Source: Ginglymostoma cirratum
Taxonomy: Eukaryota
Length of the DNA stretch: 64,000 nt
Direction of reading: 5' to 3'
Assembly (NCBI GenBank): GCA_024137785.1
Contig: JAHRHZ010000222.1
Location: 31,047,996 to 31,111,995 of the forward strand
The notes beneath the pieces were generated by a model. It had not been told where the DNA came from. It saw nothing but the letters and a program-made list of their open reading frames with translations, and did not search any database. The translations under genes and the position numbers were made by a program. Below, one piece after another: positions 21,829-64,000 of this stretch. The number at the start of each line of letters is the position of its first letter. Position 1 is the first letter of the stretch.

Positions 21829-23027
21829 GTCTCTCCCTATTTATTTCAGAAACCCTCTCTCCCTATTTATTTCAGAATCCCCTTCCTCTCCCCCATTTCT
21901 GAAGAAGGGTCTAGGCCCGAACATCTTAAAACAAAAAATGGCCAAGAACACCCTCGACCGTGTCTCCCGCATTTCCCACAAATCATCCCTCACACCCCCT
22001 CCCCGCAATAACAACCAAAACAGAATCCCCCTCGTCCTCACATACCATCCCACCAACCTCCGGATCCAACGCATCATCCTCCGACACTTCTGCCATCTGC
22101 AATCTTGCCCCACCACCAAAGACATTTTTCCCTCCCCACCCTTATCTGCTTTCCGGAGGGACCACTCTCTCCATGACTCACTTGTCCGCTCCACACGCCC
22201 CTCCAGCCCCACCACTTTTCCCTGCAACCGCACACCTCCTCCCTCACCCCATCCCAGGCCCCAAGAAGACTTTCCACATCAAGCAGATGTTCACCTGCAC
22301 ATCTGCTAATGTGGTATACTGCATTCGCTGTTCCCGTTGTGGCCTCCTCTACACTGGGGCAACCAAGTGGAGGCTTGGGGACTGCTTTGCGGAACACCTA
22401 CGCTCGGTTCGCACTAGACAACTGCACCTCCCAGTCGCGAACCATTTCAACTCCCCCTCCCATTCCTCAGACGACATGTCCATCCTGGGCCTCCTGCAGT
22501 GCCACAACGATGCCACCCGTAGGTTGCAGGAACAGCACCTCATATTTCGCTTGGGAACCCTGCAGCCCAATTGTATCAATGTGGACTTCACAAGCTTCAA
22601 AATCTCCCCTCCCGCTACGACATCTCAAAACCAGCCCAGCTTGTCCCCGCCTCCCTAACCTGTTCTTCTTCCCACCTATCCCCTCCTCCCACCTCAAGCC
22701 CCACCCCCATCTCCTACCTACTAACCTCATCCTGCCCCCTTGACCTGTCCGTCCTCCCTGGACTGACCTATCCCCTCCCTAACTCTCCACCTACACTCAC
22801 CTTTACTGTCTCCATCCCCGCTTCTTTGACCTGTTTGTCTCCTCTCCACCTATCTTCTCCTCTGTCCATCTTCTATCCGCTTCCCCTTCTCTCGCTATTT
22901 ATTTCAGAACCCCATACCCCTCCCCCATTTCTGAAGAAGGGTCTAGGCCCGAAACGTGTTAAAAGCTTTCCTGCTCCTCTGATGCTGCTTGGCCTGCTGT
23001 GTTCATCCAGCTCTACACCTTGTTATC
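21829..23027 (+). mobile_element. Penelope-like retroelement fragment, GIY-YIG region with partial tandem terminal repeat
   Basis: Frameshifted ORFs (RIPLVLTYHP; NVVYCIRCSRCGLLYTGATK). The terminal-repeat segment occurs at both 21829-21922 and about 22890-23027. Confidence 0.9.
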
Positions 23028-34226: not shown

Positions 34227-34311
34227 TTAATTCAGTCGAATATTTGGGTTTTTGCAATTGGCATTTTTCAGTCTTTCCTTTCCATCATTTGATATGTTAT
34301 TCACCAGAATC
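34227..34311 (-). CDS. NLR terminal LRR/cap exon with stop codon
   Basis: tctttctcgtttag|G (phase 2); ILVNNISNDGKERLKNANCKNPNIRLN then TAA at 34229-34227. Resembles the capping repeat of NOD-type NLRs. Confidence 0.88.
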
Positions 34312-37300
34312 CTAAACGAGAAAGACATCAAAGGATTCTAAGGGTAAGGCTCAAAAAACTTCAGTTCTTCAGTGAGTAAAAGAGTCAAACACCAGGATAT
34401 TGAAATGAAAGACCATTTTGTAAAAAAGGAGTAGGAAAGTCGACGTTTTAGGTCAGGACCCTTCTTCAGAAATGGGTTACCTGGCCTGCTGTGTTCCTCC
34501 AGCTCCACATTGTGTTATCTTTGACTGCAGCATCAGCAGTTTTTACTATCTCTGACCTTTTTGTAAAAACTGTTTTATCCTGCAGTTCTTTCTTCATCCA
34601 CAGGGAGGAATGATGTGCCTTTTTTCTATTTTACTCTTGTACTTGTTTGGATGCAATACAGAAAAGAAAGCCAAGGTGGAAATCTCATGTATAAAATGAT
34701 GCACACTAAATTTTCTTTCTGGCTTAAGTGCAGCCAGAGAAAACTGCACTTTAAATGTGACCAGAACATGCATTTTTTTAACTACTCCCATTCCAGGTGA
34801 CAACTGTAACATCTTTCAAATTGTTACAACAAACACGAAATGATACATAATTTCTTCTCACTCACTGCAAAAAAAAGTTGTGGGAGATTATGTAAATATG
34901 TCAGTTTAATTATTATATACTGGATGTTTTGAGATGGTTCTGAAATTAAAGGATAAATGTGTCCTCTTGTTGAAACCTGAACCATCTCCATAGAGGCTGG
35001 TATCCCGTCACCAAGTCACCCTTTATTTACACGTGGAGAATCTTTGACACTGATCCAGCTCCCTCAGAGCCAGCTCTTACAGTGAACAGGGTCTCTGACA
35101 CTCCTATTTTTATCTGTAAACCAGGGCTCCCCGATTGGACCAGATTAACAGCCTCAATCAGGGAACTCATATTTGATGATATCTGCCTGACTGACTTCAT
35201 TACAATCACTACAATACCCAACATGAACAGTTATGTTGAACACTGGGTTATTGTAGTCTGATTTTCTTTGACACAGTGGTGACTGAAATTAACTTTTATT
35301 TATTTTTAAATAGAACTAATTGTAAATATTAAGTTATTTGCCAGTTTAAACAAAACAAACATGCCTATTAGTATCTTACACTTCTCTTTAAATTCAGTAG
35401 CATTTTAAATAAGAAACTTTAATTTCTTCCTATAATGTGAATTTCATTGTTACTAAAACAAAGGTCAAATTTTAAAATCTGGCTGTTATTTCTGCCTCCT
35501 TTTCCAGTGGGATCACAGCATAGACACACTGAAAAGCAGAAAAAGTAGAACATTTAGTCCACTGCAGCAATACCATCATTCACAGAACTTCTCACTGATT
35601 TGTTACCTAACTGTATTTCCCTGTCTGCATTCCATTTTCTTTGACGTCTTTGGCTAATGAAAATTGATCAATCTCAGTTTTGAAATTAACAATTAATTCA
35701 GCATCAATTACTTTTTGTGAAAGAGAGTTTGAAACTTCTACCACTCTTTGCATGATGAAGTGTTTCCTACCTCCATTCTTAAAAAGGTTTACCTGGTTTT
35801 CTTTTACAATGGTCCTCGATGAATACAACATAACTAGATAGTCTCTCCCAATCTATCTTATCTGTTCTTAATATCTTGAAAACTTCAACGAAATCACCCT
35901 TAAATATTCCAAATTCCAGGGAATACAACATAAGTTTATGTAATCTCATCATAATTTTACTTTTGGAGTCAAGGTATTATTCCCGTAAAGCTACACTGCA
36001 TTACCTCCAAGGCCAATACTTTATATCCTCTCAAGCATGTGGGGCTCAGAACTGGTCACAGTGCTGCAGGTGTAGCCTAACCAGGGTTTGTATAGCTGTC
36101 TTCTACCCGCTTGCATCCTGTCCCAGTAGATATAAGGACGAGCATTCATTTAACTCTTTTAGTCATAATAGTCTTAATATTCTGTGTGCATGGACCCCAT
36201 TTCACCAGGTCTCTTCAGATGTTCAAAGTCTTTAGCTTTTCACAAGTTGGAAAGTGCTCTGTTTTATCCTTTTATATTTGACTATGCTGAAATCGATTAG
36301 CCACAATTTTGCCTATTCGCCTAAACTATCAATATTTCTTTTGCATTTTCATTTATACTGATTACAATACTATCCACCATTGATTCATCATCAAGTCTGG
36401 TTAAGCAGCTTTAAAATGCAAGCTTCCAAGAAAATTTCAATCTTCTATGATTGTGATCAACGAAAAATTCTAAATAAACAACAATTTTAATTCATGAACA
36501 ATAAAACAAAATTCTTACCACAACTCTTCAAGTGTGTCATTGACTTCTAAAGCACTTCTAAAATAATCGCTCCCTTTTTCAGTGATATCATTGTCTCCGA
36601 GTCTACGAACAAATATTCTCCATTTTATTAATCAGCCACCCAGAAAGTACAGTAACATGTAAATTGAAATCCTTAAATATAAAAAGGTATGAATCATAGA
36701 TGACATACAAGTAAAAGGAAATAACAGAGCACTTTTAAAGGAGCTATTCTCTTAAAAATAAACAATGACTTGCCTCCAGCCCAGTTAATTGTATGGTGGG
36801 AAATCACACAGGAACTTTGCTGACCCACCACTACCACGGTGGAGCGCAGAGTAGGGCAGAGGGAGACCTCACCAATGGGGGGAGCCCACAGAGCGGACCT
36901 TAACTGGTGCATGCCTGCTGCTTGGGGTGTGCGGTTAGGGGGGGGTGTGTGTGTGTGTGTGTGTGTGCGCGTGTGTGCGTGCGTGCGTGTGTGTGTGCGT
37001 GTGTGTTTCCTCATTCCAAGGCACTCAAAGCTTACTGAAGGGACCCAGCATCAGGTGTCAGGGTCCCATTGCAAGATCCCTCCCTGTCCAAATTCCCAAC
37101 CCTCCTCCCATCCAGCCCATGACTCCCTTGGCCTGTGCCTAGCTGATCCTAGGCTTCAGGTGGGTGTCTAAGTAACAGCCTCTGGCCCCCCCAGTGCCAT
37201 TTTTAACAATTAAGTGCTGCTGGCTTCTGGTAAGCAGCTATTTTTGGGTGGTACTTCTTCCTTTTGGGTCATTGATTCTGGGAAAGGCCCATCACTGCCC

Positions 37301-40300
37301 AATACAGTGTCTGATGGGTATTTAACAACAAAGAGGTGGCACAGGGCTCCCATAGATTTCCAGCTCACAGGCAAGACTCCCATTGCCTCTGCCCAATGTA
37401 ACTGAAGCTCAGGGCAAACATCAGCCAGGCTCAGCACATGAGCAGACTGGCAAGTGCCAAGCCACCAGGTAATATAAGCTGTCTGTGAAATCAAACTTAA
37501 AAGCTCAAATGGAAATAAGTGCACCTGGGAGAGTTTGGGATTGGAGAAAATGTTCTGGTGTGAGTTTACATTTAAACAATTACCTTAGCTCAACCAAGCT
37601 GCGATTTTTTGTCATTGCTTGTGCCATATACATTGCACCTTCATCTCCGATCTTGTTAACCTGCAAACTGAAACAGGACAAATAAATATATTTAATTTCC
37701 CTTCAATAATGAGAAACAGCCCTCTTAGCTCCAAAGTAACTCAATTTGTTAACACTGTGAGCTTTTTTCTTTCTATTCATGGTCTTCATTTTGCTTGGCC
37801 AGAGGGAGATTCCCACTGTGGTACAAAATGAAGATCATTAAACTCCTAGGTTCAATCTTCAACAGATGCAAGTTTAGGTCATTTAACTTCAGGTGGTCAT
37901 GGAGCATTGGTTCATAGCCCATAGGTGAAAGAGAGATAATGCAATTGAGCCAGGCTTTCTAGTTTTAGAGCTAGTGATTTCTACATTGCCATCCATCGAT
38001 AAGAAGATAATAACCATATCAGTTTTAGGTATATTTGCAATAATGGCTCTGAATATTTAGATTCATGGATGAAGAAATGCACACTTGGTATGATGGAACC
38101 ATCCTGCAACCAGGAAACTGCATTCAGAAAGGGAGGGAAAAAAATGGGGATTTAAAAAATAGAAAGTTCAATTATCTAGCAGTAATGGAACAGTGCTTTG
38201 GAGCATCAAGTGCTCTGCCATTCATTTGTAGAGTGCAGGATCACACCTATATTCTCTCATGTGGTGGGAATCTTTCTCTGGCCAAGCAAAATGAAGACCG
38301 CAAATAGAGAGAAAAAAGCTCCAAAGTTCCGCAGAAAGATTCCATTAATTTGTAAGGTCAGTTTCAAAAAAAAAAGTCTTATATGCATGGATTAGGCAGG
38401 TGTAAGACTGTTTGAAACAGTCTGTCTATTCTTGACAGTAGCTTCAATGCTCATTTTGCCTTTGTAATGGGGATTTCCCAGTTCCAATTGCTACTGCCCC
38501 TGGCAATTAGTTCCATACACAAAGGGTACTAATTTGACATACTATTGGGGTTCGCAGTCAATCTTGTGGAAGTTGATAGGCCAGCACTCTGCGTACCATC
38601 TATCACCAATACAAAGAGGCACACTGCAGCAATGTAGGGAGAGCTCCTAGCTTAAGGAAAGCCAATCAACTGCTCTAGCAGTGATTACTTTTCACTTTGC
38701 AAAGGTCAAAATTTCCTCTGAGGCACTGAGAAACGGTGGTGACACAGCATATCTCCCAATCGGTTCAGGCCTTATTTTTAAATGAACACTTCCAGAGGAC
38801 AATACTACTATTAATTATTTAATAGTGTAGTCGTGCCTCTAGTTATAGCTGGGTGATACAATTCATTTTACCTTGATTTTATTAAATAATTAAATCATAC
38901 AAGTTATTTTGTCAGCACTTCTGAGAATTCCTCTTGGTCACAATGAAGATCCAATATGGACTTAACAATAACAACTACGAACAGTGCTGTCCTGAAATTT
39001 AGTAATATCACCAAGTAGTGCACAAAAGGTTTGAGGAAAACAAACAATACCCAAAAACTCGCAATGTTGTGTTGATCTCTAGAGCTTCAGCCATCGAACG
39101 GGCACCTTTAGCTCGGACAGAGTTTGCCCTTAATCTAGTGAAATCAGAGGGATTTTGTTAAAATAAACAAAGTAAAATCATCAGACATCTTAACAGCAGT
39201 TAATTTTAGTTGTAACTTCTCCTGCAAGTTTGATAAACATTCTACTTTGCCAAGTTGATTACATACCCCAATGTTTTCAGACTCCTGTTTGTTTTCAATG
39301 CATCAGCTATTTGGGCTGCTCCTTTTTCCTGTATGGAGTTGTGCTTCAACCTGTGAAAGTTCCAGATATTCAGACACCATATCATTTGTATAATTTGCCT
39401 GGACCCGAAGCTAGTGATATAGCTATAGTGATACACTGTAGTCCATCATTTCATTGAAAGCATCTGATTTACTTATAATTGATTTGGAAATTGCTCAAAA
39501 AGTCCAGTATGCACGGCATACAGGGGAATTATTTATTGCAGTTAAAAAGTGAAATGTAGTTTCCTACTATATAGAACAAGATGGAAACATATTTTCACGT
39601 GTCAAACAGGGCTTGTAATTTAATGTTCCAATTATAATACTACTTTTAATTAGAATCACAAACACAATGGTGCAAATAACATTTTGAGTCACTTTTAATT
39701 TTGAGGATCAAGATTATTATTTACAACCATCTAAAACTAATCATGTGATATATTTGAAGAAAATAAGCTTGACAGGTCATCAGCTTCTATTATTTATAGA
39801 AGAATTTTTATAGAATTTATAGAATCCTTACAGCATGGAAACAGGCCCTTTGGCCCAACAAGTCCACACTAACCCTCAGAGCATCCCACCCAGACCCATC
39901 CCTATAACCCACCTAATCTACACATCCCTGAACACTACGGGTAATTTAGCATGGCCAATCCACTTAACCTGCGCATCTTTGGACTGTGGGAGGAAACTGG
40001 AGCACCTGGAGGAAACCCACGCAGAGACGGGGAGAACACGCAAACTCCACACAGACAGCCGTCCGAGGGTGGAATCGAACCTTGGTCCCTGGTGCTATGA
40101 GGCAGCAATGCTAACCACTGAGCCACCGTGCAATAAAAATCAGTTGCACAGAATCATGATTAAGATTGTTATCCTTTTTTCAGAGTCCTTACACAGTCAC
40201 TGATTTGTTTGAAGTTTGTTTAAAGATTTTGTCTTGAACCGTGAATACTGATGGTACTATCAGAGAACTAGTTTGGAAAAGTTCGCACGGCAAAATACTG

Positions 40301-43300
40301 AATAATTGATATAATAATCACTGAAAACCCAATAATTAACTACTACTTTTCTGCTAATATGCGTTTTTGCATCATTTACTGCAATGAGTCCTCCCAATTT
40401 CCATACTGGCTTTAGCTACAGTATTTCAATCAAATAGTCTAATAAAACAAAAATAACAACAGAAAATTGTACCAATCATAACTTTTAACAATTTAACCTT
40501 TAAAACATACAAAGTAAGTCTTGGCTCCTATAAAGCACAAAGTTAAAGTACAGTGGAATCAACACTGTAATGATACGACAGTTCAAGGAAAGAGTTTAGA
40601 ATTAACTTTGTCATTCTTTGGCTGTGAATTTTAACTCCTAAAAACTCAGTTTTCAGTCAATAACATTCTGTTTAGGTTATATCTTAGTAGTGAACAAAAA
40701 TTTGGAGTTGATATTTGATTTTATCCACTATGCCATTTTAAAGATGTGAAACAGACAAAGACAATTTACCTTAAAATTTCTATTCTGCACATCTTACTTT
40801 TGAGTGCATTCGCAATGATCTCTGCTCCTTCATCGTCTAGCATGTTTCCCTCTAAACTGTGAATGAAAAGAAAATTATCACCTTGTTGTTAGCCTGGCAT
40901 TTATGAATATTTTTCAACTAATGACATATTCATTCCTATAGCTGTACTGGTTAACACCTCAATTTTAGGTAGCCCATTTCTGCTCATGGCATGACCTCCT
41001 ATTCTCTTCATTGACCCGGGACTGATCCCTGGCTTTACCATCATGGTACAGTGTGTGATATGTTGGATCATGATGTTGCAGACTATAGATGAGTACTGCT
41101 GTGCTCCTGCTGATGGCCCACAGTGACTCATGGATGTCTAGTCTTGAGTTGAAGATCAGTTTGAAATCTATTCCATTCAAGACAGCGGTATTCCCCACAG
41201 AAAAACGGAGGGCAACCTCAATGAGAAGGCAGGCCTATGTCAACAAAAGAAAAATGTGGATACACCTGCCATGGATAGATTAGTGGGGGCGAGGTCAAGT
41301 ACAATTTTTCCCTCTTGTTGGTTCCCTCACCACCTGTTGTAAGGCCAGTTCTCCAGGGGTGGGGTGGAGTGGACAGGGTGGTGTTGAGGGAGTGGCAAAG
41401 GATGCTAGTTGGCAGGAGGTTTCTTTTCCCATGTTTAATCCAACAATGTAAGATTTCACAAGGTCCAGAGTAAATGTTAGGGACTCCTGGGGCAACTCCC
41501 TCCTGACTGTGTTGCCACCTCTGGAAATGGTGATGGGTGACGTCAGGAACATTGTCTGTAAGATATGGTGCCATCTGGACGATTATATCAAGCTGTTGCT
41601 TGACTAGTCTGTGGAGCAACTGTGGAGCAATTTTTGCACAAGCTCATTCCCAGGGTCAGTAAGTAGGACTTTGCAGGGTTGACAGGGATGGACATTCTGT
41701 TGTTGTTTTTGGTGTTTTCATCAATGCTATATGGTCAATCCAGTTTCATTCCTTTTATTAGACTTTGTAGTAGTTAGATACAACTGAGTGACTTGCTGGA
41801 CCACTTCAGATGGGAGTTAAGAGTCAATCATATTGTTAAGGGTCAATCACATTGCTATGAATCTGTGGTCACATGTAGACCAGACAAAATGAGGAGGGCA
41901 GAATTCATTTCCTAAAGGGCATTAATGAATCAGATGTGTTTTTATGACAAGCGACAATGGTTTTATGGTCACCAAAAGACACGTTTCTAATTCCAGATTT
42001 ATTAATTGAACTAATATTTCACCAACTAGCATGATGAGATTCAAACTTATGTCCACTAGCATTAGCCTAGGTCAGTAGCACTATGACATTATGAACACTA
42101 GGACATTAACACTATGCCATTCACTCTCTGTTGAACCATAGGAAGAGATATAGAGAAATGACTAAAGGCTGGGTTATGAAATTGGGGTTTTGAGGAGGTA
42201 AAACACGGAAAAGGCAGTGGGGTATTAGATCAGTATTTCAAAATACTGGGGCTGATGGCACAATTGTCAATCATGGGGTTTGGGGGAGGCGGCGGGGAGG
42301 GGGGGGGGGGGGGGGGAGGCGGGGGGGGGGGGGGGGGGGTCGGGTACGTGGTGGTGATAGGGGAATGCTCTAGCTAGAGTTTCCAGGCAGAGTTTTGATA
42401 GTTAGGGAAATTAGGAATGATAAAATGATTGGCACATTCAAAATCGAAGGATGAGAATTCATTTGAGGCACTGGTGGATCAGGAGCCAACATGAGAAGGA
42501 GTGATGGATGATGGATGAATGCATGCAGGGGAGCTCGCTGAATTGAAATTTAATAGTTTGAAGCCTGCTAGGAGAACACTGGAGTAGCTAAATCTATGTG
42601 ACATGGGCATGGATGGAAGTTTTAGCAATGGCTGCGTTTGCTGACACCAGCACATGTGAACCATGCGCTACTTTAAATCACACTGGGGCTGGGAGGGGGT
42701 GGGGAGTGAGGAAGACTGGAAGGACCGTAGAAGAAGAGACCAATCCCCACCCCATCAATGTCCCGTGCACCCTTTCCCCACCACTGAAGCCCTGTTCAAA
42801 TTCCTGTGTGCAGTACTACATTTCTGTGTGATGTCACATATAAACTTGCGATGACATATTGTTTGGAAACGTACGCATGCACATTTCTGAACATGCACAC
42901 ACGCATAGTTGCCCACAATCGCCAGTGTCAGCAAACATTGCCTTAAAGGCTAATTACACTGAAAGATTTGCATTTAGTAAGATGGTATTCACGACTTCAA
43001 GATGTTCCTGGCACTTTACGCCCAATAAAGCACGTTTCACTTGTGATGTGAGAATCTGGCAACCAGCGTGAAAATAGCAATAAGATTATTGGCCAGATAA
43101 TCTTTCCTAATGATGTCACTTGGGGGATAACCATTGACGAGATACCTTACTTGAATATTAATATGAAATCTTCTAAATCTACCTGAGGGAGTAGACAGGG
43201 CCTTAGTTTAATGCTGAATCCAAAGACAGTGCACCATCTGCTGATACAGCAGAAGGTCAGCCTGAAGACTGTGCTCAAGGCTAATCTAAAACTTACTGAC

Positions 43301-46300
43301 TCAGAGACGATAACATTACATAGCCATAGCTAACATCATAATGAGTGGCTCACACTACTGTGGCACATAAAGTATCTAAATCAAAACGCAAATTTTCAGA
43401 GGTTGCTCATAGTCACTTCATAGTCCTAAAGCAACCGTCTAAGCATTGTGAACCAAAGTTGTTTATGGGACCTGCATACAACTATGTCAGACCATTGCTC
43501 TCGAATCTACGCATACATTGTATTAATCTGCTATTTAACAATCAAATATAAAGATTTTCATTTTTTTTTTACTGTTTAAGAAACTTTAAAATCAAATGTT
43601 TGAATTTGTAACAAAAGCAGAGATTGCTGGAAAAATTGTTTCTAATTTCCAGCATCTATAGATCTTTGTACTTTTTATATGAATTTGTAATAAAGATTTA
43701 AAAATATTTGCCACAAGGTAAATGTATCAATTGCAGAACAATTGAATATTCAATATGAAAATAATATTCAATATGAAAACCAAAAACACCCATAATATTT
43801 ACTGTAGGCATGTGTGAAGGATGTTGACAGCATCATTTACATGAAATGCATGATACTCTGGTAAACTAATTTAATATTAAGCATAAATCTATTAAACACT
43901 TATCGCCGTATCTTTAAAAGACAAAATGACCAAATCACCAAAATTCCAGGGTATTTCCATCTTTTCAAGCTCATACTCAAAAAAAACACATTTTAATACC
44001 TCAGTGTTTTGACTCTTGGGAAAACAGACTCGAGTCTTTGGAAACCCAAAGCTCCAGCTTTACATCCGTCTAATTCCAGTGTTTCAATAGTTGTATGATA
44101 AGAAAGAAGGTTTGCAATTGCAGTGCAGTCAGTCACATTCAAAGAAATGTAAGAAAAGTTTACAATATCACTGGTTTGGGAGGCAACTTGTTGTGTTAAA
44201 TTTTCATTTGCCGCTTCATAGAGACAATGCGAAGCTGTAAGTTTTTGTCTTTTGTGTGCTGTATACTTTATACTGTTTTCTGGAGTTAGCGTGTCTTCTT
44301 TAGGGACGTCAACTGCAGCAACATTTTTGATGGCATCAAAGACTTCTCTTTCTTTAACGTGATGTTTAGGCATCAATTGCTTCACAAGTTTTCTGTTGCT
44401 GTGAGACACCAGGCCAGCAGTGAACCTTAGTACAATCTCAAACACACTGTTCTTTGAACTGAAGGCTTTATGCACGTGATCCACACTAGGTTCATTTGCA
44501 GAAATGCAATATAATGCTGCAAAAAACTCTTGGTGCGTCAAATGGAAAAACTGCCAAATGTCAGACTGCATCATCTTCAGGCTCTCTTTGTTGAGAATTT
44601 TTTTCCAGAAGGATTTCGTGCCTTGAGCAATATTTTTTTCAACATCTTTTGCTGAGAATATTATTGTTTTATTGATGACTCCACCCCATGCAAGTTGCGC
44701 TAATTTAATGATCTCATTTTTGTCTTCCTCATCTTCTATGCAAAAGGACTCAGGGTCTTCTTCCTCATCATTGTCACAGACCAATAAACACTTGGTAAAT
44801 CTGAGGAACAAGTCTGTGATTGTCCTGGGAAAGGAAGAGAGCTGAGACCACTTGCCTTTACTATGAAAGGATTTCTGGAGGTAGAAACACAGGATGTCAC
44901 AAAATGCAGGAACATAGCAAAGTCCAAATAAGGAATCAATGCTCTTCACTGTTTGAAAGACATGTTCAGCAACTTTTTTATCCTTGAAGCACTTCAAAAA
45001 GTATGCAGCAATTTCATTTTTGGAAAATCCTAAAATTTCAGCACAACGATCAAAATATGCTTTGTTATCCAAATGAATTGTGGTTGGGCGGGATGTAATA
45101 AGGATGGTTGCATCATGAACAAGGTCTCCCTTTATAATACTTGCAATCAAATGGTTAGTGTGTTGAGCAATGGAGATGTCAACATGAGAATAAATGCCAA
45201 ATTCAAGAGATGATTTGAATTCATCCAATCCATCAAATAAAAACAGAATCCTATTGGGCCATTCTAATATCCTAGTGCACACTGCTCTCAGATGAGGGTA
45301 CCTACGTACAATAAGCTCAGTTAGACTAATTTTCTCCTTGATTGTGTTCAGCTCCCGAAAACTGAAATACAGCAGTATATAAAACCCAGCATAAAGGGTT
45401 CCACAGGCCCAACTATAGGCGATCTTTTGGATCATAACACTTTTGCCTATACCTGCCACTCCTTGCACTAGAGTGACTCGTGGTGGTTTTTCCCCAGGCG
45501 CAGATGGGGAAAGAAGCTGTCTTAAATCTATACGTTCACATGCTGTATAGTCTCTGTATTGTAGGAGTTCATGTTCTGTTTTATTCCTTTCTCGAACATT
45601 GAGAATGACTAAGCTGGTAAAATGTTCTTGTAGCAAAGGTCTGGAGTTATCAAATGCAAAGTATGGTTTAATTCTCTCCATTTGTGCTTTTACTGTTTCT
45701 TTATGGGTGGCCACAACTTCAGAGATTTCTGTAATTACAAGAGAAAAGCAATAAGGCAAGATGAAACTTGCATTGTCTCTTATAATGAACGAGTCCCCAG
45801 CAAATCTGACAGTGTCACCATACTTACTATGTTACACATATTATACATTTACCCAATGAAAACAAGGAAATCAAACTTAATCTTTCTTGCTCCACAAGGT
45901 TGATTTATGTTGAACTAAGGAGATTATAGCGTCAACATAGTTTTCGGGATTATACTCCATATGACGACATCTGCTACAGGACTTTGCCCTACAAAAAAAG
46001 GCTCATCTGAAAGGTAAATAATTGGAAATTGAACAGCAGGGGCTTACTTGTGTATCTAAAGGATTGTAAGGCATCTACTAATTGTAGTACACTTTAAGAA
46101 TTAAAATATTTCTTGTAGAAAGATAAGAAGATACCTAGTTTAAACTATAATGTATTTCATTTCACTATGTAATAAACACAGTATATTATTAAAATCAATG
46201 CTGGTGCACTCTGTATAAGACGACAAGACATCACGGAATTGAAAGCTGTCCTTTAAGAAGCTGATTCTTTCTGATGTACTATGCATAGTAATAATGGCAT

Positions 46301-55300: not shown

Positions 55301-58300
55301 TGTGTATTTGGATGATAAAAATAATTACAATTTACAGTACCAGGAACAGCAAGAAACAGTACTCTCTTTAAAATTGATCAATATTGTAAATTTTTCTATG
55401 TTACATCATTGAGACAGTATCACTCACATGATTGGTGAGGATCAAAACGGACCAACAGCACCCTTTTAGGCAAACTAGACATGGGCATTAAATACAGTCT
55501 TGCCAAATTCAATGCCGTTCCGAAAACCAAGCTCCAGGAAGACTAATAATTTACCTTGTCTTTTAATGCTGCAAAAAATAAATGTTCCAAAACAAACAGC
55601 TGTGGTGATCACACATGTTAGAAGAAAAGTGAGCAATGTTCCTGATCTTGTTCTTGGGTTGGATCCTAGGGGAATGCAAGACCAAATATGTGTTAGTAAT
55701 TATTCAATGCTGTTTGTCTGTGTTGGCTAAATCAAGACTGCGCTGGTCATAGAAAACAGAAATTTTCTCGCAGCGCAGCATTACACCTCACTAACTGTAA
55801 ATACCCTTTATGGGTAAATAAGGCAGTAACTCCTATTTTATTCACAATCTCTGGAGCAAACCTAAATGTTTGTAAGTCAAGTAGTCTTACTATAGTCCAT
55901 CTAGTATAATATATAATTCTTGAAATTTTTAACATGTATTTCAGAGGACACTCATTACTTCACAATAGAATTCTTTCAGCAAAAATAGAAATGTGAAATG
56001 TTAGACTGTTCAGCATCTGCACAGCCATTTAGATTGTGAGGTCAATATGAAAATAAGTACTTATTGAGCCAACATTTTACTCAGTCCTGCTCTGCACACA
56101 AGGTATATTGTGTCTGAAGTCTGTTTAGAAAATAATATTTTTCACCTTTTTACCCTCAAGATCTATGGCTGGCTTGCGTCAAAGCCTTTGTTTTACTGAT
56201 ATTAGGAGAGCAATTTGGTGATCAAAATAAAAGCCACATGTTGAGGAGTAGTACTATGACAATGAGGTGGAAAAGAATAGCTCTGAGAGCATTTAAAAAA
56301 AAATGTCATTTATAATTGTCAGGCAACACAGTAGCCCAGTGGTTGGCACTGCTGCCTCGCAGCAGCAGAGAACCAGGTTCAATCCCAGCCTTGGGTGTCT
56401 GTGTGGAGTTGCACATTCTCCCCGTGTCTGTGTGGGTTTCTGCTAGCTGCTCCAGTTTCCTCCCACAGATTCGTGGGTAAGGTGGTTTGGCCACGCTAAA
56501 TTGGCCCGTAGTGTCTAGGAATGTGCAGGGCAGTGGGTATGGGTGGGATACTCTTCAGAATATTGGTGCAGGCTTGTTGGGCCAGAAGTCCTCTTTCCAC
56601 TCTGTGGGGTTTCTATATTTAAACACGTAGGCATACAATAGAAGGGCTTGCTTTGGTTTATGTGTAAGATCCACGATCAAACTTGACAAAGGTTTTGAAA
56701 TAACAGAGGCTCCAAAGAGTAGTGCTCTTCTCTACACTGATACCATAGAGGGTAAGTCAATTTCATGCAGACTTTATTGATAAATCCCCTCAAATACACA
56801 CAAAAGTAATTGGGACTTGGGGCAAATAGAATAACAGCTGTCCATCCAACTTTTCATGGTGAAACTGAGAATTGAGACAGCAAATACTGCAAGTTGTCAA
56901 ATGGAAGCCGAGTTCTCATATTTCGAGGGTCCAATTCCTTCTATGATTGGCTTGCAGGGAGGCAAAAAGGTTACTCACAAGCTATTCAACCATAAATGGC
57001 ATGGTGGAGCCAAGTTATGGTCAGGAAGCGGATGTAAATATATTTACATATCTTGTGGAGAGTTGGATTCTTCTGTTCCTTGGTCAAAATATGGAGAGGA
57101 ACATTTTCCTTCCTTCAAGATTTTAAGGAGCATTTGGTATCTGCGTAGCACCTAGCAAAACCTGTGTTTTCAAATGCATATTGACAAAATAGTTGCTACC
57201 CTCATAAAGTGGGAGGAAGGAATTAAATTTCTTTGACATCAAAATTGCTCCAAGATGATGCATCGTAGAAATGGTCATAGAAATTCAGAACAAAGTTAGT
57301 TCTCTGCGACAGATATGTATTCTAGGATCTGAACAAAACAATACAAATTCCAGCCAAGACTCCAAATAAAAAAATATAGAATTTGCGTTACATTAGAATT
57401 TTAAAAAAGTGTTTCTTGCCATTTAGCAGGTAGCATTCTCCTTTAACTACTCACCCTTGATTGTCAAACTAACAACTTTCTCTAGAGGTGTCTTTAAAGC
57501 TTCATGAATAACTTTGCAGACATAAGAAGCTCCGTCATCCATTTGAACGCCTTTGATGATGAGGAATGAAAGCAGATTAAATGTCCCATCTTGATTTTGT
57601 TGAGGTGATCCTGTAACTGCTCTTGATGTGATGTCAAGTTGATTTCCACTGTCTTGTGAGCCACGTCTTAACCAAGAGATAGAATGATTTCCTGGATAAA
57701 AGCTTTTCATCTCGCAAATTATTGCTTTATCTTCACCAGGTTCAATTACAACATTTTCAGAGTTTACCAAAACTGAAGGAGGTGCTACAAGGACACAAGG
57801 AATAAGGATAAATATGTTATTTTTATTAGCTTTCTTTATTGATGTTACCTTAAAATACAATTTAACTATGTTAGCCAGTGTAGCCCCCCACAAACCTGTT
57901 CTCCTATTTAATTAATTCGTTGTTGATCTGTGATTAACACTAAATTTGTTCTGGGTCTCAAATGGCTCAATACTGTTGCTCAACAAAAGTCTAGCGATCT
58001 CAGACTCAAAGTTTACAATTTACTCAGCATCAATTACCGAGTGAGTTACAAATTTTTATCGTAATTTGCATGAAGAGGTACATCCTAATTTGTCTTCTGA
58101 ATAATCTAGCTCTGATTTTGGACAAAACTCCCTCTCCCACCCAGTCGAAATGACCTCTTCCCAGTGGTTATGAGTGTCCCATGACATCTTGAATTTTTGA
58201 AGAAATCACCCCTAACCATATGAATACAATTCTAGTTTGTATGATCTGTCTTTGTAATTTATTGCTTGCACCTCAGGTCTTCTGACAAATGCACACAACA

Positions 58301-61300: not shown

Positions 61301-64000
61301 TCAAAGGCTAGAGGGAGCGGACCAGGCAGAAGGAGAGTGTTGAATGCGGGTGAAGGGGTCTGTGGGATGGGGAAATGACTCCTATGCAAAGAAATGGGCG
61401 CAGAGGCAACAGAAGATGTGTTCAACGTCATGTCATGCACAAAATTAATTCAGATGCAGGCGCAGAGCAATAAAACTGAGACCTTTTTGAGTACAGAACA
61501 TTCAGCATCAGAGTGGAAGGTCAGAAGTGATAATAAATACCCAACAAGTGGTGGAATCAGGAGAATGGATGATGGGTATTTGGTCTTAGTCATACATACT
61601 AAGAAGTTCGACTTGTATAGCACCTTGAATATAATAAAACATCCCAAGGTACTTAACAGCAGCTTTATAAGACACACATATTCCATTTCAATTAAGGGTG
61701 AATTTTTTCTGTAGGTTTTGACAATTTTTAGATATAAGATTGTCATTATGGACCATTTTTCTATTTTAAACAAAGCAGGCAAGGCACAGTGCTGTCACAT
61801 GCAAACTAATGTTCCAAGTCACAACAAATGATTTGGTCTGAACCATAGCCTCAGATGGGCAAGCCTTTCTGTACCAGTTCCAATCTCTGCATTTGCTTTA
61901 CTAATCATCCTTGTGACCACTTTGAGTGAAAAGGCCTATTTCTACAGCCAGATTTATTGTGTGCCCACTTGGGAGTAGCCTGGGAGCCCAAACAACTAAC
62001 ATGATTATAAGCAGCATTACTTTGGGATTAAAATACATTCTTCAGGTAAAAGCAACACCGCGTGGTACCAGAACAACACTTCCAACAGGGCTGAAAGACA
62101 CAGTAATGGCCTTGGAGAGTATCTCTTCTTTCTTGCGCACTGAAGGGGAGGGGGGAAAACACATCTCACCTTGTACAGGGATCTCCTCACAGGAGAGCAA
62201 TCCTCCATGCACCCACGCTTCTTCCCCATGGTGCTTAGTTTAATGTTGAAATTAATACTGTGTTATTTTTCCCTTTAGTAGTAGAAATAGGCTTGTGACA
62301 TACCAGTCTATGCTAAAGTCAGCGTTTTCCAATTTGAACTCAGCAGAATTTAGAACAGTTTGTCATAATTAAAAGAGCAATTTGCAGGAACACAACAGTT
62401 CAGGAAGCATGGTACTGTAATGTGATATTTCTACTTCTTTTGCCACTTTTATTTGGAGCTTCTGAGCATGATTCCTTGATTAGCTTTGAATTATGAGAAG
62501 TCATGGACAGCATTCAAAATCCTTAAGGCTTTCAACAGCTGTCAGGCAGAAGTGATTTTTAAACCTATCAAACTAAGTTAAGTTAAATTCAAGCTCAGAG
62601 CTGACTGCTACTAAATTAATGCTGTCAAATCTCTCTTTCATACCCTTTAACTTCTTTAGAATTATTCACCCCGAAATACTAAAATTTAGCTTTCCTTATT
62701 CTGTCAATAGGTTGGTTTTTGAAGATCTTTCATTTTCAGACAGTTCTTTTGTTTGATCTTTAGAGCTACCTATTTTTAGTCATTGTTGATCATTTCCCAC
62801 TCTCCCATCCAGAATTGATCTATTTTGATGTTTAGCTTTTACTTTGTTTCACATAAATTGCATCCTCTATCAACTTATTTGGACAGGTGGCTCCCCACAC
62901 ATTACAAGTTTACTTTCCATAAACCAACCTTGCTCACTCAGGTTAAATTTCATTTTTCAGGTTCACTGCACTAAAGTGTGAAAGCTATTCCACTCCAGTC
63001 ACTCACTAATCTTCAATTCTTTACCTACTTTTCCACAATGTATAATTTTAACTGGCAATTACCAGTCAGCACATTGTAGTTAAGTCTAGTTTCCAACTTG
63101 AATGTTTCCCATATTAGAGGTTTACATGAATGATCCTGGGAATGAAGGGCTTGTCATATGTGAAGCAATTGAGGACTGTACTCAATGGAGTTTAGAAAGA
63201 TAAGGGAGGATCTCATTGAAATTTACACAATGTGGAGAGACCTGGATAGATTGGACACGGAGAAGCTGTTTCCACTAATAGGAGAGACCAGAACCCGAGG
63301 GCCCCAGACTCAGCAAAGAGATGACCCTTTAGAACAGAGATGGGGAGGAAATGCTTCAGCCAGAGGGTGGTGAATCTGTGGCACTCATTGCTACAGAGGG
63401 CTCTGGCAACCAAGTCATTGAGTGTATTTTAGACAGAGATTGATAGGTTCTTGATTAGTAAGGGGATCAAACTTTATGGAGAGAAGGCAGGAGGATGGGA
63501 TTGAGAAATATATTAACAATGATTGAATGGCAGTGTAGACTCGATGGGCTAAATGGCCTAATTTTCAGATCATATATCTTACGGCCTTACGGAACCCCTG
63601 CTGGTGGATATTTTGAGATCCAGAAATGTACCTTTTCCTCTAAGGTAACTTAAAGTGTTTTCAATGTAAATTTCATCACTTCTTATCAATGGTTACATTA
63701 CAAATGTGAATGGGTCTCAAAGAAATCATATACAGTATCTTTAAGCTAAATCAGGTGATGTCAAATTTTTTTGCCACTTTACACCAACCTGCATCTAATT
63801 GACAAATTCACATCTTTATAATTGTATGATCCTAACATTTTACACTTCTCACAATCAATCAGAATTCTTATCGGCACCATTAACATTTCCAGAGAATACA
63901 GTAAATAAAGGAAAACCTCCAGAGGTCCTAAAGGTTTATACATTAGGCATCATTTTTCACTCACCTGTTACCGATAGAGAGACTTTCCCCGTTGCTTTAT
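34227..64000 (-). CDS. Spliced gene model (5'-partial): B7-H6/NCR3LG1-like IgV-IgC1-TM joined to cytosolic IgC1-CARD-NACHT-LRR, a putative transmembrane NLR
   Basis: Exons 64000-63965, 57784-57455, 55665-55555, 52075-51644, 47359-46922, 45728-44000, 40856-40770, 39350-39267, 39134-39051, 36602-36519, 34311-34227. All junctions are GT-AG with phases 1,1,1,1,1,2,2,2,2,2. The 3500 nt join into one open frame ending in TAA. The signal peptide and most of the V domain lie beyond the window. Confidence 0.72.
34426..34553. mobile_element. Short Penelope-derived inverted fragment with near-perfect 15-bp TSD
   Basis: Flanked by gaccattttgtaaaa (34411-34425) and gacctttttgtaaaa (34554-34568). The body matches the terminal repeat family. 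Confidence 0.7.
34975..35213 (-). mobile_element. Solo LTR-like repeat, same family as 52303-52522
   Basis: Reverse-complement similarity, e.g. cattacaatcactaca and accaagtcacccttta. Confidence 0.65.
35570..36330 (-). mobile_element. Diverged CR1 LINE fragment
   Basis: RKHFIMQRVVEVSNSL..VIDA..NFKTEID is a CR1 C-terminal motif on the minus strand. Confidence 0.75.
36519..36602 (-). CDS. NLR LRR exon 4
   Basis: tttgttcgtag|A...TG|gtaaga, 84 nt, phase 2-2; LGDNDITEKGSDYFRSALEVNDTLEELW. Confidence 0.92.
36944..37006. repeat. (GT)n/(GCGT)n microsatellite
   Basis: Directly visible. Confidence 0.95.
39051..39134 (-). CDS. NLR LRR exon 3
   Basis: gatttcactag|A...GG|gtattg, 84 nt, phase 2-2; LRANSVRAKGARSMAEALEINTTLRVFG. 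Confidence 0.92.
39267..39350 (-). CDS. NLR LRR exon 2
   Basis: actttcacag|G...GG|gtatgt, 84 nt, phase 2-2; LKHNSIQEKGAAQIADALKTNRSLKTLG. Confidence 0.93.
39807..40131 (-). mobile_element. tRNA-derived SINE (HE1/V-SINE type), in NLR intron
   Basis: Reverse-complement homolog of 10087-10385. Confidence 0.88.
40770..40856 (-). CDS. NLR LRR exon 1
   Basis: cttttcattcacag|T...AG|gtaaat, 87 nt, phase 2-2; SLEGNMLDDEGAEIIANALKSKMCRIEILR (RI-type LRR). Confidence 0.92.
40870..42060 (-). mobile_element. Degenerate LINE fragment in NLR intron
   Basis: Decayed endonuclease-region sequence with multiple broken ORFs. Confidence 0.55.
42282..42339. repeat. Poly-G tract
   Basis: About 58 nt, almost entirely G. 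Confidence 0.95.
44000..45728 (-). CDS. NACHT NTPase, winged helix, HD2 and first LRR exon of an NLR
   Basis: Acceptor cttttctcttgtaattacag|AA (phase 1), donor CTG AG|gtatta (phase 2). Walker A GVAGIGKS, FSFRELN, Walker B LFLFDGLDEF, sensor-1 LITSRP, CYVPAFC, winged-helix FFHLTHQEFFAALY, LRFTAGL, HCLYE and LRR onset LELDGC. Confidence 0.96.
46922..47359 (-). CDS. CARD (death-fold) exon plus linker
   Basis: Acceptor ttgttaacag|GT, donor GAA G|gtaagc, 438 nt, phase 1-1. IRPLLNLLVNKKIISEDDHNAIK...DKGRTLLDMLSHRGQEICANFLDVLQD..YYPGL is a CARD helix pattern. Confidence 0.85.
49070..49950 (+). mobile_element. CR1 LINE 3' fragment, in the intron between the Ig and CARD exons
   Basis: VQRNLGVLV; FPLVGESMTRGYNLRV..RKHFFS..LWNSL motifs; duplicated 3' end. 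Confidence 0.88.
50780..51450 (+). mobile_element. Old L2-type LINE 3' fragment
   Basis: Remnant of LAxAFVTSxxDxxN..LxxLP..KLxLIQ motif and a gctacataagtgcaagttg-like tail. Confidence 0.6.
51644..52075 (-). CDS. Second Ig C1-set-like exon, downstream of the TM (predicted cytosolic), atypical
   Basis: Acceptor tttttttttcag|CT, donor AAA G|gtgaat, 432 nt, phase 1-1. Motifs APKV..SLACAVLWFKPKAIEVCWY...GAYSLVSQLTF...YSFEVQHDAL follow the C1-set pattern, with F-strand Cys replaced by Phe and a long internal insertion. Confidence 0.82.
52303..52522 (+). mobile_element. Solo LTR-like repeat
   Basis: TG...CA termini, TATAAA and AGTAAA motifs. An inverted homolog lies at about 34975-35213. Confidence 0.65.
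52531..52850 (+). mobile_element. tRNA-derived SINE of a second family
   Basis: tggcctgatggtatt A-box-like and ggttcaaatccc B box. The 3' tail (tagggatgggcaat..cagtgatgcccaca) is shared with the LINE end at about 2895-2937. Confidence 0.65.
53085..54300. mobile_element. Two CR1 LINE 3' fragments (plus strand about 53085-53480, minus strand about 53715-54300)
   Basis: LFPRVEGSITREQRFKV motif on the minus strand; ggagcagaggagactgaggg..tctatga tail on the plus strand. Confidence 0.8.
55555..55665 (-). CDS. Transmembrane exon (not in ORF track)
   Basis: Acceptor cattcccctag|GA, donor CAA G|gtaaat, 111 nt, phase 1-1. Encodes GSNPRTRSGTLLTFLLTCVITTAVCFGTFIFCSIKRQ, a ~24-residue uncharged stretch followed by KR stop-transfer residues. 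Confidence 0.85.
56321..56615 (+). mobile_element. tRNA-derived SINE (HE1/V-SINE type), diverged
   Basis: A/B boxes and central domain similar to 10087-10385. Confidence 0.8.
57455..57784 (-). CDS. Extracellular Ig C1-set exon, B7-H6 (NCR3LG1)/tapasin-like
   Basis: Acceptor ccttgtgtccttgtag|CA, donor AAG G|gtgagt, 330 nt, phase 1-1. Motifs ICEMKSFYP, ISW, NQDGTFNLLSFL and YVCKVIHEALKTPL. Both canonical Cys and the C-strand Trp are present, plus an NHS sequon. Confidence 0.9.
58442..60012. mobile_element. Penelope-like insertion with inverted structure and 15-bp TSD, in the intron between the V and C1 exons
   Basis: Minus-strand RT/GIY-YIG part (about 58442-59598) joined to a plus-strand terminal repeat (about 59599-60012). 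Direct repeat gaagaaattttgttt at 58427-58441 and 60013-60027. Confidence 0.9.
59884..59911 (+). ncRNA. Minimal hammerhead ribozyme motif
   Basis: CUGAUGA-A-GGG(UCUAGG)CCU-GAAAC-GUC within the Penelope terminal repeat. Confidence 0.65.
63112..63590 (+). mobile_element. CR1 LINE 3' fragment
   Basis: EFRKIREDLIEIY..LDRLDTEKLFPLIGETRTRG motif; cttacgg tail. Confidence 0.85.
63965..64000 (-). CDS. 3' end of Ig V-set exon (G strand), truncated by window edge
   Basis: Minus strand reads xAT AAA GCA ACG GGG AAA GTC TCT CTA TCG GTA ACA G|gtgagt = KATGKVSLSVT with a consensus phase-1 donor. It resembles the recalled end of the B7-H6 V domain (KAQGTVQLEVV). Confidence 0.7.

What the first reader, a model, noticed from the sequence alone, without database searches (positions are those of the whole stretch)
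34227..64000. Candidate transmembrane NLR: B7-family Ig ectodomain, TM, then CARD-NACHT-LRR in one reading frame
Seen: eleven same-strand exons with canonical splice sites and matching phases join without a stop into about 1,165 aa, ordered IgV(end)-IgC1-TM-IgC1-CARD-NACHT-LRR. Established: vertebrate NLRs such as NOD1, NOD2, NLRC3-5 and NLRPs are soluble cytosolic proteins without a signal peptide or TM helix, and B7-family proteins normally have short or unstructured tails. Inference: this is a type I membrane protein carrying a complete NLR on its cytosolic side. Ligand or cell-contact clustering of the ectodomain could drive NACHT oligomerisation and CARD signalling, or the TM could simply target the NLR to a membrane. 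I do not recall this architecture being described in vertebrates, but I cannot search to confirm novelty.
Basis: partly seen in the sequence, partly recalled or inferred. Interest (0 to 1): 0.95.

Follow-up and report, generated by a model that had tools for sequence, protein, structure and literature searches.

The report
Shark B7H6 fused to an NLR
This nurse shark gene makes one membrane protein with a B7-H6-like (natural-killer-cell ligand) outside and a complete CARD-NACHT-LRR innate immune sensor inside; it is real and conserved in sharks and rays, and is already in sequence databases, though no paper I could search describes it.

Summary

- **Identity:** exon by exon they match residues 126-1318 of GenBank QTT61908.1, "B7H6 [Ginglymostoma cirratum]", with one amino-acid difference.
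- **RNA:** spliced contigs from three independent studies join IgC1 to TM to the second Ig exon with no mismatches, then run on for 1.2-2.7 kb.
- **Conservation:** the same architecture is annotated once per species in 13 other sharks and rays, mostly under "NLRC3-like" or "NOD1-like" names. Nothing closer than 33% NACHT identity was found elsewhere.
- **Topology:** every orthologue has a signal-like N-terminus and one strongly hydrophobic segment. The Ig domain after the TM has Phe in place of the second disulfide Cys in all species.
- **Second Ig domain:** it resembles the Ig domains that follow the TM in turtle and lungfish B7-H6-like proteins.

So a single-pass transmembrane NLR is well supported. 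Its topology and function remain inferred. I favour cytosolic sensing that drives both CARD signalling and clustering of the NKp30-ligand ectodomain.

No searchable paper describes the fusion, but the sequence is already public, so novelty is limited.

The parts
63965..64000 (-). Last 36 nt of the IgV exon. The exon runs off the window edge, and its donor GT follows at 63964.
   Evidence: Translates to residues 126-136 of P0172. P0172 has a V-set domain at residues 34-135, E 1.3e-15.
57455..57784 (-). IgC1 exon of the ectodomain, 110 aa, phase 1-1, with both canonical Cys.
   Evidence: Pfam C1-set 7e-11. The best non-antibody solved relative is human B7-H6 (3pv6, 4zso), E 5.5e-15. It is joined to the TM exon in RNA contigs.
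55555..55665 (-). Stalk, single transmembrane helix and basic juxtamembrane residues; 37 aa, phase 1-1.
   Evidence: It holds the only 21-aa stretch with a negative summed insertion energy: -2.1 kcal/mol in the nurse shark protein, and -0.7 to -3.4 across the 12 aligned orthologues. Both of its joints appear in contigs from three studies.
51644..52075 (-). Second Ig-like domain (Ig2), 144 aa, lying after the TM and so presumably cytosolic. It keeps the first Cys and has Phe in place of the second.
   Evidence: Partial Pfam C1-set hit, 5e-5. The Cys-to-Phe change is invariant in 12 species. The AlphaFold2 model is all-beta with 9 strands, mean pLDDT 66.6, and gives weak Ig-fold hits. It aligns to the post-TM Ig domains of turtle B7-H6-like proteins, z about 7. 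It is spliced to the TM exon in RNA contigs.
46922..47359 (-). CARD exon, 146 aa, phase 1-1. There is no ATG ahead of the CARD, so it cannot be a first coding exon.
   Evidence: Pfam CARD 1.9e-11. Closest solved CARDs: ICEBERG 8e-7, NOD1 7e-5, RIPK2 0.02. It is identical to P0172 residues 428-573. It is skipped in Narcine isoform X4 and Pristiophorus isoform X2.
44000..45728 (-). NACHT exon, 576 aa: NACHT ATPase with Walker A (GIGKS) and Walker B (LFDGLDE), helical domain HD2, and the start of the LRR region. Phase 1 in, phase 2 out.
   Evidence: Pfam NACHT 1.4e-35 and NLRC4_HD2 3e-11. Best solved relatives: NLRP3 4e-42, NOD2 1.4e-29. Both Walker motifs are invariant in 12 species.
40770..40856 (-). 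LRR exon 1 (29 aa).
   Evidence: Matches P0172 residues 1150-1178 exactly, AG/GT borders.
39267..39350 (-). LRR exon 2 (28 aa).
   Evidence: Matches P0172 residues 1179-1206 exactly. The whale shark model lacks these 28 residues.
39051..39134 (-). LRR exon 3 (28 aa).
   Evidence: Matches P0172 residues 1207-1234 exactly.
37584..37667 (-). LRR exon 4 (28 aa).
   Evidence: Matches P0172 residues 1235-1262 exactly. P0172 has a Pfam LRR_6 hit at residues 1228-1250.
36519..36602 (-). LRR exon 5 (28 aa).
   Evidence: Matches P0172 residues 1263-1290 exactly.
34227..34311 (-). Last coding exon (28 aa, C-terminal cap) with stop codon TAA at 34229-34227.
   Evidence: Matches P0172 residues 1291-1318 and ends in a stop.

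Best explanation
This is the nurse shark gene that its GenBank depositors called B7H6. It is one gene and one mRNA, encoding one single-pass type I membrane protein of 1318 aa.

**Layout.** Outside the cell: a signal peptide, then a B7-H6-like IgV and IgC1. Then one transmembrane helix. Inside: an Ig-like domain without a disulfide, then a complete NLR (CARD, NACHT ATPase with intact Walker motifs, HD2, about six LRRs).

**Shown:** the exons, the splicing of IgC1 to TM to Ig2, identity to the deposited protein, and conservation across sharks and rays.

**Inferred:** the topology (about 0.8), and the way it works.

**Mechanism I favour (about 0.4).** It works like a butyrophilin, from the inside out.
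1. The cytosolic LRR-NACHT module senses a cytosolic danger or microbial signal and oligomerises at the membrane.
2. The CARD is brought together and starts cell-autonomous signalling through a CARD partner of the caspase-1 or RIPK2 type.
3. The same oligomerisation clusters the B7-H6-like ectodomains. This raises their avidity for NKp30 (NCR3)-family receptors on cytotoxic lymphocytes, so the infected or stressed cell is flagged.

Isoforms that skip the CARD would perform only step 3.
For: **Gene structure and identity**
- 12 exons flanked by AG and GT splice sites, with no internal stops, reproduce residues 126-1318 of QTT61908.1 with one amino-acid difference.

**RNA**
- Single spliced contigs from three studies (3319, 2522 and 4051 nt) carry the joints 57455/55665 and 55555/52075 with 0 mismatches.
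- They continue 1223-2696 nt beyond the Ig2 donor. Their first 3 letters after that donor fit the CARD exon start and not the NACHT exon start.
- The 4051-nt contig matches the length expected for the full 3957-nt coding sequence plus short UTRs (my arithmetic).

**Conservation**
- One orthologue per species with V-set, C1-set, CARD, NACHT and LRR in 13 other elasmobranch species.
- Mean pairwise identity: IgV 76%, IgC1 75%, Ig2 64%, CARD 70%, NACHT 83%, LRR 85%.

**Topology**
- Each orthologue has one segment with negative insertion energy and a signal-like N-terminus.
- Ig2 lacks the second Cys in all species, while both ectodomain Ig domains keep their pair.

**Ectodomain is B7-H6-like**
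- The IgC1 exon's best non-antibody solved match is human B7-H6, E 5.5e-15.
- The next full-length hits after the orthologues include turtle NCR3LG1.

**NLR is intact**
- CARD, NACHT, HD2 and LRR are all detected.

**Direction of signalling**
- CARD-skipping isoforms keep the ectodomain, NACHT and LRR.
- The LRR is the most conserved part.
- The butyrophilin precedent comes from established knowledge and was not tested here.
Against: - There is no protein-level evidence here for surface expression, topology or binding.
It rests on a 3-nt overhang, contig lengths and database models.
- Assembled contigs can in principle be chimeric, and their runs are only guessed to be RNA. Removal of the introns argues that they are.
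- The one raw poly(A) RNA-seq run had too few reads to show joints.
- The RefSeq models are automatic predictions, and I could not read any paper behind the GenBank entry.
- Nothing here tells inside-out from outside-in signalling.
- The CARD partner and the NLR ligand are unknown.
Confidence: 0.75

Rival explanations
1. Same protein, but signalling runs from the outside in. NKp30-family receptors or another ligand cluster the ectodomain. The resulting proximity drives NACHT oligomerisation and CARD signalling (NF-kB, a caspase, or death of the target cell).
For: - The CARD is present and conserved at 70-75%.
- The ectodomain is strongly conserved, which suggests a fixed partner.
- CARD effectors are known to be activated by induced proximity (established knowledge).
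Against: - CARD-less isoforms in two species keep everything else, so they would have no output under this model.
- NLRs are normally held closed by their LRR until a cytosolic cue arrives (established knowledge).
- The LRR is the most conserved part, which fits a sensor better than a passive effector.
Confidence: 0.3
2. Same protein, but the two halves work independently. The TM and ectodomain only place the NLR at a membrane (plasma membrane or phagosome). This would replace the lipid anchors that bring NOD1, NOD2 and NLRP3 to membranes.
For: - Cytosolic NLRs need membrane recruitment to signal (established knowledge; NLRP3 palmitoylation is the subject of PMC11130711, listed).
- The TM segment itself is only moderately conserved, 59%.
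Against: A mere anchor would not need a 76%-conserved IgV-IgC1 ectodomain of B7-H6 type, kept since sharks and rays diverged.
Confidence: 0.2
3. These are two neighbouring genes, a B7-like gene and a CARD-NLR gene. The fused RNA is only read-through or an assembly or annotation chimera, and no fusion protein exists.
For: - All exons are phase 1-1, so any join stays open by default.
- Gene predictors and assemblers do merge neighbouring genes.
Against: - Three independent assemblies show the same exact joints.
- The protein deposited under a researcher-style GenBank accession has the fusion.
- 13 other species have the same model, with the linking Ig2 exon conserved and open.
- Neither Ig2 nor the CARD exon has a usable start codon ahead of its domain.
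- No second copy of either half lies in the window.
Confidence: 0.04
4. The hydrophobic segment does not act as a stop-transfer anchor, so the whole chain, NLR included, is luminal or extracellular. An extracellular NACHT has been claimed for a sea cucumber NLR.
For: An extracellular NACHT is reported for AjNLR-new (PMC13133943).
Against: - The segment is strongly hydrophobic in every species and is followed by basic residues.
- Loss of the Ig2 disulfide Cys fits a reducing compartment.
- A CARD-NACHT-LRR needs ATP and cytosolic partners (established knowledge).
Confidence: 0.03

Closest known systems
Mammalian B7-H6 (NCR3LG1), the ligand of NKp30
   Same: - IgV-IgC1 ectodomain followed by one TM.
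- The shark IgC1 exon's best non-antibody solved match is human B7-H6.
- The GenBank entry names the shark protein B7H6.
   Different: - The mammalian tail is a short non-NLR tail (from memory). The shark tail is an Ig-like domain plus CARD-NACHT-LRR.
- The shark gene lies next to a PLEKHF1-like gene, not in the human NCR3LG1 neighbourhood (human map from memory).
- Binding to NKp30 was not tested.
Cytosolic NLRs: NLRP3, NOD1, NOD2, NLRC3
   Same: - CARD-NACHT-HD2-LRR order, intact Walker A and B motifs, and 28-aa LRR units.
- The NACHT is closest to NLRP3 among solved structures, and the CARD is closest to ICEBERG and NOD1.
   Different: - Those proteins are soluble (established knowledge). 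This one has a signal-like N-terminus, an Ig ectodomain and a TM.
- Its NACHT is at most 33% identical to any non-orthologous protein found, so it belongs to none of the named subfamilies despite its 'NLRC3-like' and 'NOD1-like' labels.
Butyrophilins (BTN3A1, BTN2A1)
   Same: A B7-like IgV-IgC ectodomain, one TM and an intracellular sensing domain that passes intracellular information to lymphocyte receptors (established knowledge). This is the closest functional analogue in vertebrates.
   Different: Their intracellular sensor is a B30.2/SPRY domain. No such domain is present here; a whole NLR takes its place.
Sea cucumber membrane NLRs (AjNLRC4, AjNLR-new)
   Same: Ig domain, TM and NACHT in one chain. 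AjNLRC4 is described with an extracellular Ig and an intracellular NACHT (PMC13133943).
   Different: - They are invertebrate proteins.
- As described, they consist of Ig, TM and NACHT only, without the B7-type IgV-IgC1 pair or a CARD.
- Common descent was not tested and is unlikely.
Turtle and lungfish NCR3LG1-like proteins (P0165, P0166, P0167)
   Same: - IgV-IgC1, then a TM, then Ig C1-like domains after the TM.
- The shark Ig2 aligns to these post-TM domains.
   Different: - They carry five or six Ig domains after the TM and no NLR.
- They are automatic gene models that I did not verify.

Membership tests
Animal NLR (NACHT-LRR STAND ATPase) | NACHT domain with Walker A and Walker B motifs | tested here: met
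   Pfam NACHT 1.4e-35. GIGKS and LFDGLDE are invariant in 12 orthologues.
Animal NLR (NACHT-LRR STAND ATPase) | C-terminal leucine-rich repeats | tested here: met
   Five LRR exons of 28-29 aa plus a cap exon. P0172 has a Pfam LRR_6 hit, 8e-11.
Animal NLR (NACHT-LRR STAND ATPase) | Effector domain (CARD) immediately N-terminal of the NACHT | tested here: met
   Pfam CARD 1.9e-11. Solved relatives are ICEBERG, NOD1 and RIPK2 CARDs.
Animal NLR (NACHT-LRR STAND ATPase) | Soluble cytosolic protein without a signal peptide or TM (usual for vertebrate NLRs) | tested here: not met
   Signal-like N-terminus and one TM-grade hydrophobic segment in every orthologue. This is prediction only.
NLRC3 / NOD1 subfamily (the RefSeq names) | Close sequence relationship of the NACHT to NLRC3 or NOD1 | tested here: not met
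   After the orthologues, the best hits are at most 33% identical and mostly named NLRP3-like. Among solved structures, NLRP3 (4e-42) ranks above NOD2 (1e-29).
B7 family, B7-H6 (NCR3LG1) | IgV plus IgC1 ectodomain followed by a single TM | tested here: met
   P0172 has V-set at residues 34-135 and C1-set at 153-233, with the TM starting near residue 257. The window holds the IgV end, the IgC1 exon and the TM exon.
B7 family, B7-H6 (NCR3LG1) | Closest relatives of the ectodomain are B7-H6 proteins | tested here: met
   Human B7-H6 is the best non-antibody solved match of the IgC1 exon. Turtle NCR3LG1 proteins are among the next full-length hits. No tree was built.
B7 family, B7-H6 (NCR3LG1) | Binds NKp30 (NCR3) | not testable with these tools
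B7 family, B7-H6 (NCR3LG1) | Conserved gene neighbourhood with mammalian NCR3LG1 | tested here: inconclusive
   The downstream neighbour is a PH+FYVE gene resembling PLEKHF1. An earlier unchecked note places POP4 upstream. In human these lie on 19q12 and NCR3LG1 on 11p15 (from memory).
Butyrophilin | Intracellular B30.2/SPRY domain | tested here: not met
   No SPRY or PRY hit in P0172.
Echinoderm membrane NLR (AjNLRC4 type) | Ig, TM and NACHT in one polypeptide | tested here: met
   The architecture matches the description in PMC13133943. Homology to the sea cucumber protein was not tested.

The most novel reading that the evidence does not exclude
Elasmobranch B7H6 is a transmembrane NLR that reports cytosolic danger directly to lymphocytes. 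Oligomerisation of the NACHT inside the cell clusters the NKp30-ligand ectodomain outside. Innate sensing and recognition of 'induced self' by NK-like cells would then be wired into one polypeptide. The stress-induced expression of B7-H6 in mammals could be a later, transcriptional replacement for this link.
Probability: 0.3. Interest if true: 0.9.

Novelty: new variant of a known kind. Interest (0 to 1): 0.7.

Why it matters
Vertebrate NLRs are treated as soluble cytosolic sensors, and B7-family ligands as passive flags with short tails. Here the two are one conserved protein, kept since sharks and rays diverged.

- **It opens testable questions.** Can an NLR be driven by, or itself drive, events on the cell surface? 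How did the NKp30/B7-H6 axis begin? Why do B7-H6-like proteins of sharks, lungfish and turtles carry Ig domains after their TM?
- **It corrects database names.** The orthologues are filed as "NLRC3-like", "NOD1-like" or "uncharacterized". These labels hide both the ectodomain and the distinct NACHT lineage.
- **Its novelty is limited.** The sequence is already public, and the nurse shark GenBank entry is named B7H6. No paper in the searchable library links B7H6 or B7-H6 with NACHT in this sense.

Tried and rejected
- **Two-gene or read-through reading:** rejected on RNA joints, conservation and the lack of start codons.
- **Paralogous copies in the window:** tblastn of each exon against the window found none. 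Only the LRR exons match one another.
- **Raw poly(A) RNA-seq run X16:** only sparse reads on the Ig2 and IgC1 exons and no joints. This is uninformative, not negative.
- **Ig2-to-CARD joint:** The single read-laying run was limited to 6 kb, and I spent it on the IgC1-TM-Ig2 side.
- **Ig2 against solved structures by sequence:** only weak C1-set hits, E 0.007 or worse.
- **AlphaFold2 of Ig2:** moderate confidence (mean pLDDT 66.6). Foldseek hits are weak (E about 6e-4, TM-score 0.4-0.46) and mostly V-type domains, so the Ig subtype is left open.
- **Orthologues outside sharks and rays:** not found. This is a weak negative, because only the 8000 candidates sharing most words were scored, and length limits apply.
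- **Papers not held:** Kinlein et al. 2021 (PMC8273117), Flajnik et al. 2012 (PMC3709836) and Ohta and Flajnik 2015 (PMC4594805). I cannot say whether the fusion is described there.
- **Retroelement ORFs:** Pfam gave no hit.
- Exons were searched one at a time by reference, and full-length comparisons used database proteins returned by the tools.

Full report
**What is in the sequence**

The feature lies on the minus strand. Stop-to-stop translation and Pfam searches on single exons gave a C1-set Ig exon, a hydrophobic exon, a second and partial C1-set exon, a CARD exon and a long NACHT exon, followed by short LRR exons.

I then fixed the borders exon by exon. There are 12 exons from 64000 down to 34227. 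Every internal border is AG...GT. The phase is 1 through the Ig, TM, CARD and NACHT acceptor borders, and 2 from the NACHT donor through the LRR exons. The stop codon TAA is at 34229-34227.

The true count in the window is 12 exons and 1,193 residues, the difference being one 28-aa LRR exon.

Symmetric phase-1 exons are typical of both Ig-superfamily and NLR genes. Joining without a stop would therefore also happen for two adjacent genes, so other evidence was needed.

**RNA evidence from the same species**

I searched public runs with 44000-53900. Several runs held 0.25-0.28 of the sampled words. The NACHT, CARD and Ig2 exons together make up 0.26 of that stretch.

I laid four runs on 51600-57599. 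In three runs from three different studies, one contig each (3319, 2522 and 4051 nt) carries IgC1, the TM exon and Ig2.
- The joints are exact at 57455/55665 and 55555/52075, with GT..AG ends on the minus strand and no mismatches.
- Each contig continues 1223-2696 nt past the Ig2 donor.
- The alignment overshoots that donor by three letters (to 51641). Those letters fit the start of the CARD exon and not the start of the NACHT exon.
- The 4051-nt contig has the length expected for a 3957-nt coding sequence plus short UTRs (my arithmetic).

The contigs lack introns, so they derive from spliced RNA. The one raw poly(A) run gave only sparse reads and no joints.

**Identity of the gene**

An exhaustive search with the NACHT exon found one close cluster. 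Its representative is a 1168-aa electric ray protein with signal peptide, IgV, IgC1, TM, Ig2, NACHT and LRR, in which the CARD is skipped.

Searching with that protein, and then with an alignment, found one orthologue per species in sharks and rays:
- Rays: Narcine, Pristis, Mobula, Hemitrygon.
- Sharks: Pristiophorus, Carcharodon, Heterodontus, Scyliorhinus, two Chiloscyllium species, Mustelus, Heptranchias, Rhincodon.
- One further record in the bamboo shark cluster whose species name is cut off in the output.

Most are 1289-1352 aa and carry V-set, C1-set, CARD, NACHT and LRR.

[quoted passage not shown] The window's 12 exons reproduce its residues 126-1318 with a single difference, F211L. 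So the window is the nurse shark B7H6 gene, and the fused protein is already in GenBank.

**Domains and topology**

Pfam on the deposited protein gives:

| Domain | Residues |
|---|---|
| V-set | 34-135 |
| C1-set | 153-233 |
| CARD | 448-524 |
| NACHT | 657-823 |
| HD2 | 969-1087 |
| LRR_6 (best repeat) | 1228-1250 |

- In each of 13 orthologues, exactly one 21-residue stretch has a negative summed insertion energy (-0.7 to -3.4 kcal/mol). It always lies right after IgC1.
- The next most hydrophobic stretch is the N-terminus in 12 of the 13, as expected of a signal peptide. The exception is a Narcine isoform with a different N-terminus.
- Both ectodomain Ig domains keep their canonical Cys pairs.
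- Ig2 keeps the first Cys and has Phe at the second position in all 12 aligned species. This fits a domain living in the reducing cytosol.
- The Walker A and Walker B motifs are invariant.
- Mean pairwise identities are IgV 76%, IgC1 75%, TM region 59%, Ig2 64%, CARD 70%, NACHT 83% and LRR 85%. Every module is under constraint, and the linking exons are no decayed relics.

**Where the parts come from**

- *IgC1.* Its best non-antibody solved match is human B7-H6, E 5.5e-15 over the whole domain.
- *Ig2.* It gives only weak C1-set matches by sequence. Its AlphaFold2 model is an all-beta, nine-strand domain of moderate confidence with weak Ig-fold matches.
- *Ig2 and other B7-H6-like tails.* B7-H6-like proteins predicted in two turtles and a lungfish also have their TM directly after IgV-IgC1, followed by five or six C1-like Ig domains. 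Shark Ig2 aligns better to those post-TM domains than to the ectodomains (z about 7 for the first post-TM domain). An unchecked note of this scan reports a second shark B7-H6-like gene with six Ig domains after the TM. Ig2 therefore seems to belong historically to the B7-H6 half, with a CARD-NACHT-LRR joined behind it.
- *NACHT.* It is closest to NLRP3 among solved structures (4e-42, against NOD2 at 1e-29).
- *CARD.* It is closest to ICEBERG and NOD1.
- *Distribution.* A search restricted to the NACHT region found orthologues at 76-96% identity only in sharks and rays. The next hits drop to 33% or less and are mostly NLRP3-like proteins. No chimaera or bony-vertebrate orthologue appeared, which is a weak negative.

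**How it probably works**

Shown: one mRNA and one reading frame, intact catalytic motifs, and conservation.

Inferred: type I topology with the NLR in the cytosol.

I favour inside-out coupling, at about 0.4. The LRR-NACHT senses a cytosolic cue and oligomerises at the membrane. This brings the CARDs together for cell-autonomous signalling. It also clusters the B7-H6-like ectodomains, raising their avidity for NKp30-family receptors. My reasons:
- Butyrophilins pair a B7-like ectodomain with an intracellular sensor domain (established knowledge).
- The LRR is the most conserved part.
- Natural isoforms in two species drop exactly the CARD exon yet keep the ectodomain, NACHT and LRR.

The rivals are:
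- simple membrane tethering: about 0.2
- an artefactual fusion: about 0.04
- a fully luminal chain: about 0.03

**Comparison with what is known, and novelty**

Membrane NLRs with Ig, TM and NACHT have been published from a sea cucumber (PMC13133943).

The whale shark genome paper surveys NLRs without mentioning an Ig or TM form (PMC8455134).

No paper in the searchable library holds both B7H6 and NACHT. The four that hold B7-H6 and NACHT are unrelated cancer reviews.

The three papers most likely to describe shark B7H6 are not held.

I therefore rate this a new variant of known kinds (NLR and B7 ligand). It is real and striking, but the sequence is already deposited, and the GenBank entry already carries the name B7H6.

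**Limits and rules followed**

- Exons were searched one by one by reference, and full-length work used database proteins returned by the tools.

Noticed in passing
window 10821-11639 (-): A single-exon 273-aa ORF with a PH domain and a FYVE zinc finger, resembling PLEKHF1 (Pfam FYVE 3.8e-19, PH 3.9e-12). An earlier unchecked note places POP4 on the other side. If so, the B7H6-NLR gene sits between two genes that are neighbours on human 19q12 (human map from memory).
   Followed up: partly
window 58414-59618 (-), 16058-17227 (-), 21821-23098 (+): Three related retroelement fragments with long open frames. They carry a reverse-transcriptase-like YIDD motif and a GIY-YIG-like nuclease motif, which would suit Penelope-like elements (from memory). 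Pfam gave no hit. One copy lies in the intron between the IgV and IgC1 exons.
   Followed up: partly
window 52200-54400 and 56400-56600: Intronic stretches whose summed depth in the RNA contigs reaches the thousands to tens of thousands, with many variant letters and short joints. They look like interspersed repeats that are expressed genome-wide.
   Followed up: no
P0165, P0166 (turtles) and P0167 (lungfish), database proteins: These B7-H6-like gene models have their only TM-grade segment right after IgV-IgC1. Five or six C1-set Ig domains follow it, on the presumed cytosolic side. If the models are right, Ig domains after the TM are a family trait of non-mammalian B7-H6.
   Followed up: partly
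P0001 (Narcine isoform X4), P0155 (Pristiophorus isoform X2): These annotated isoforms skip exactly the 146-aa CARD exon and keep everything else. Two bamboo shark isoforms replace the IgV with other N-termini.
   Followed up: partly
window 57455-57784 (-), residue 211 of P0172: There is a single amino-acid difference between the window (Leu) and GenBank QTT61908.1 (Phe), in the IgC1 exon. It is probably allelic.
   Followed up: no
window about 36700-37050 and 42233-42373: Simple-sequence runs that translate to His/Thr/Arg repeats and to a poly-Pro run in the LRR-region introns. They look like microsatellites.
   Followed up: no
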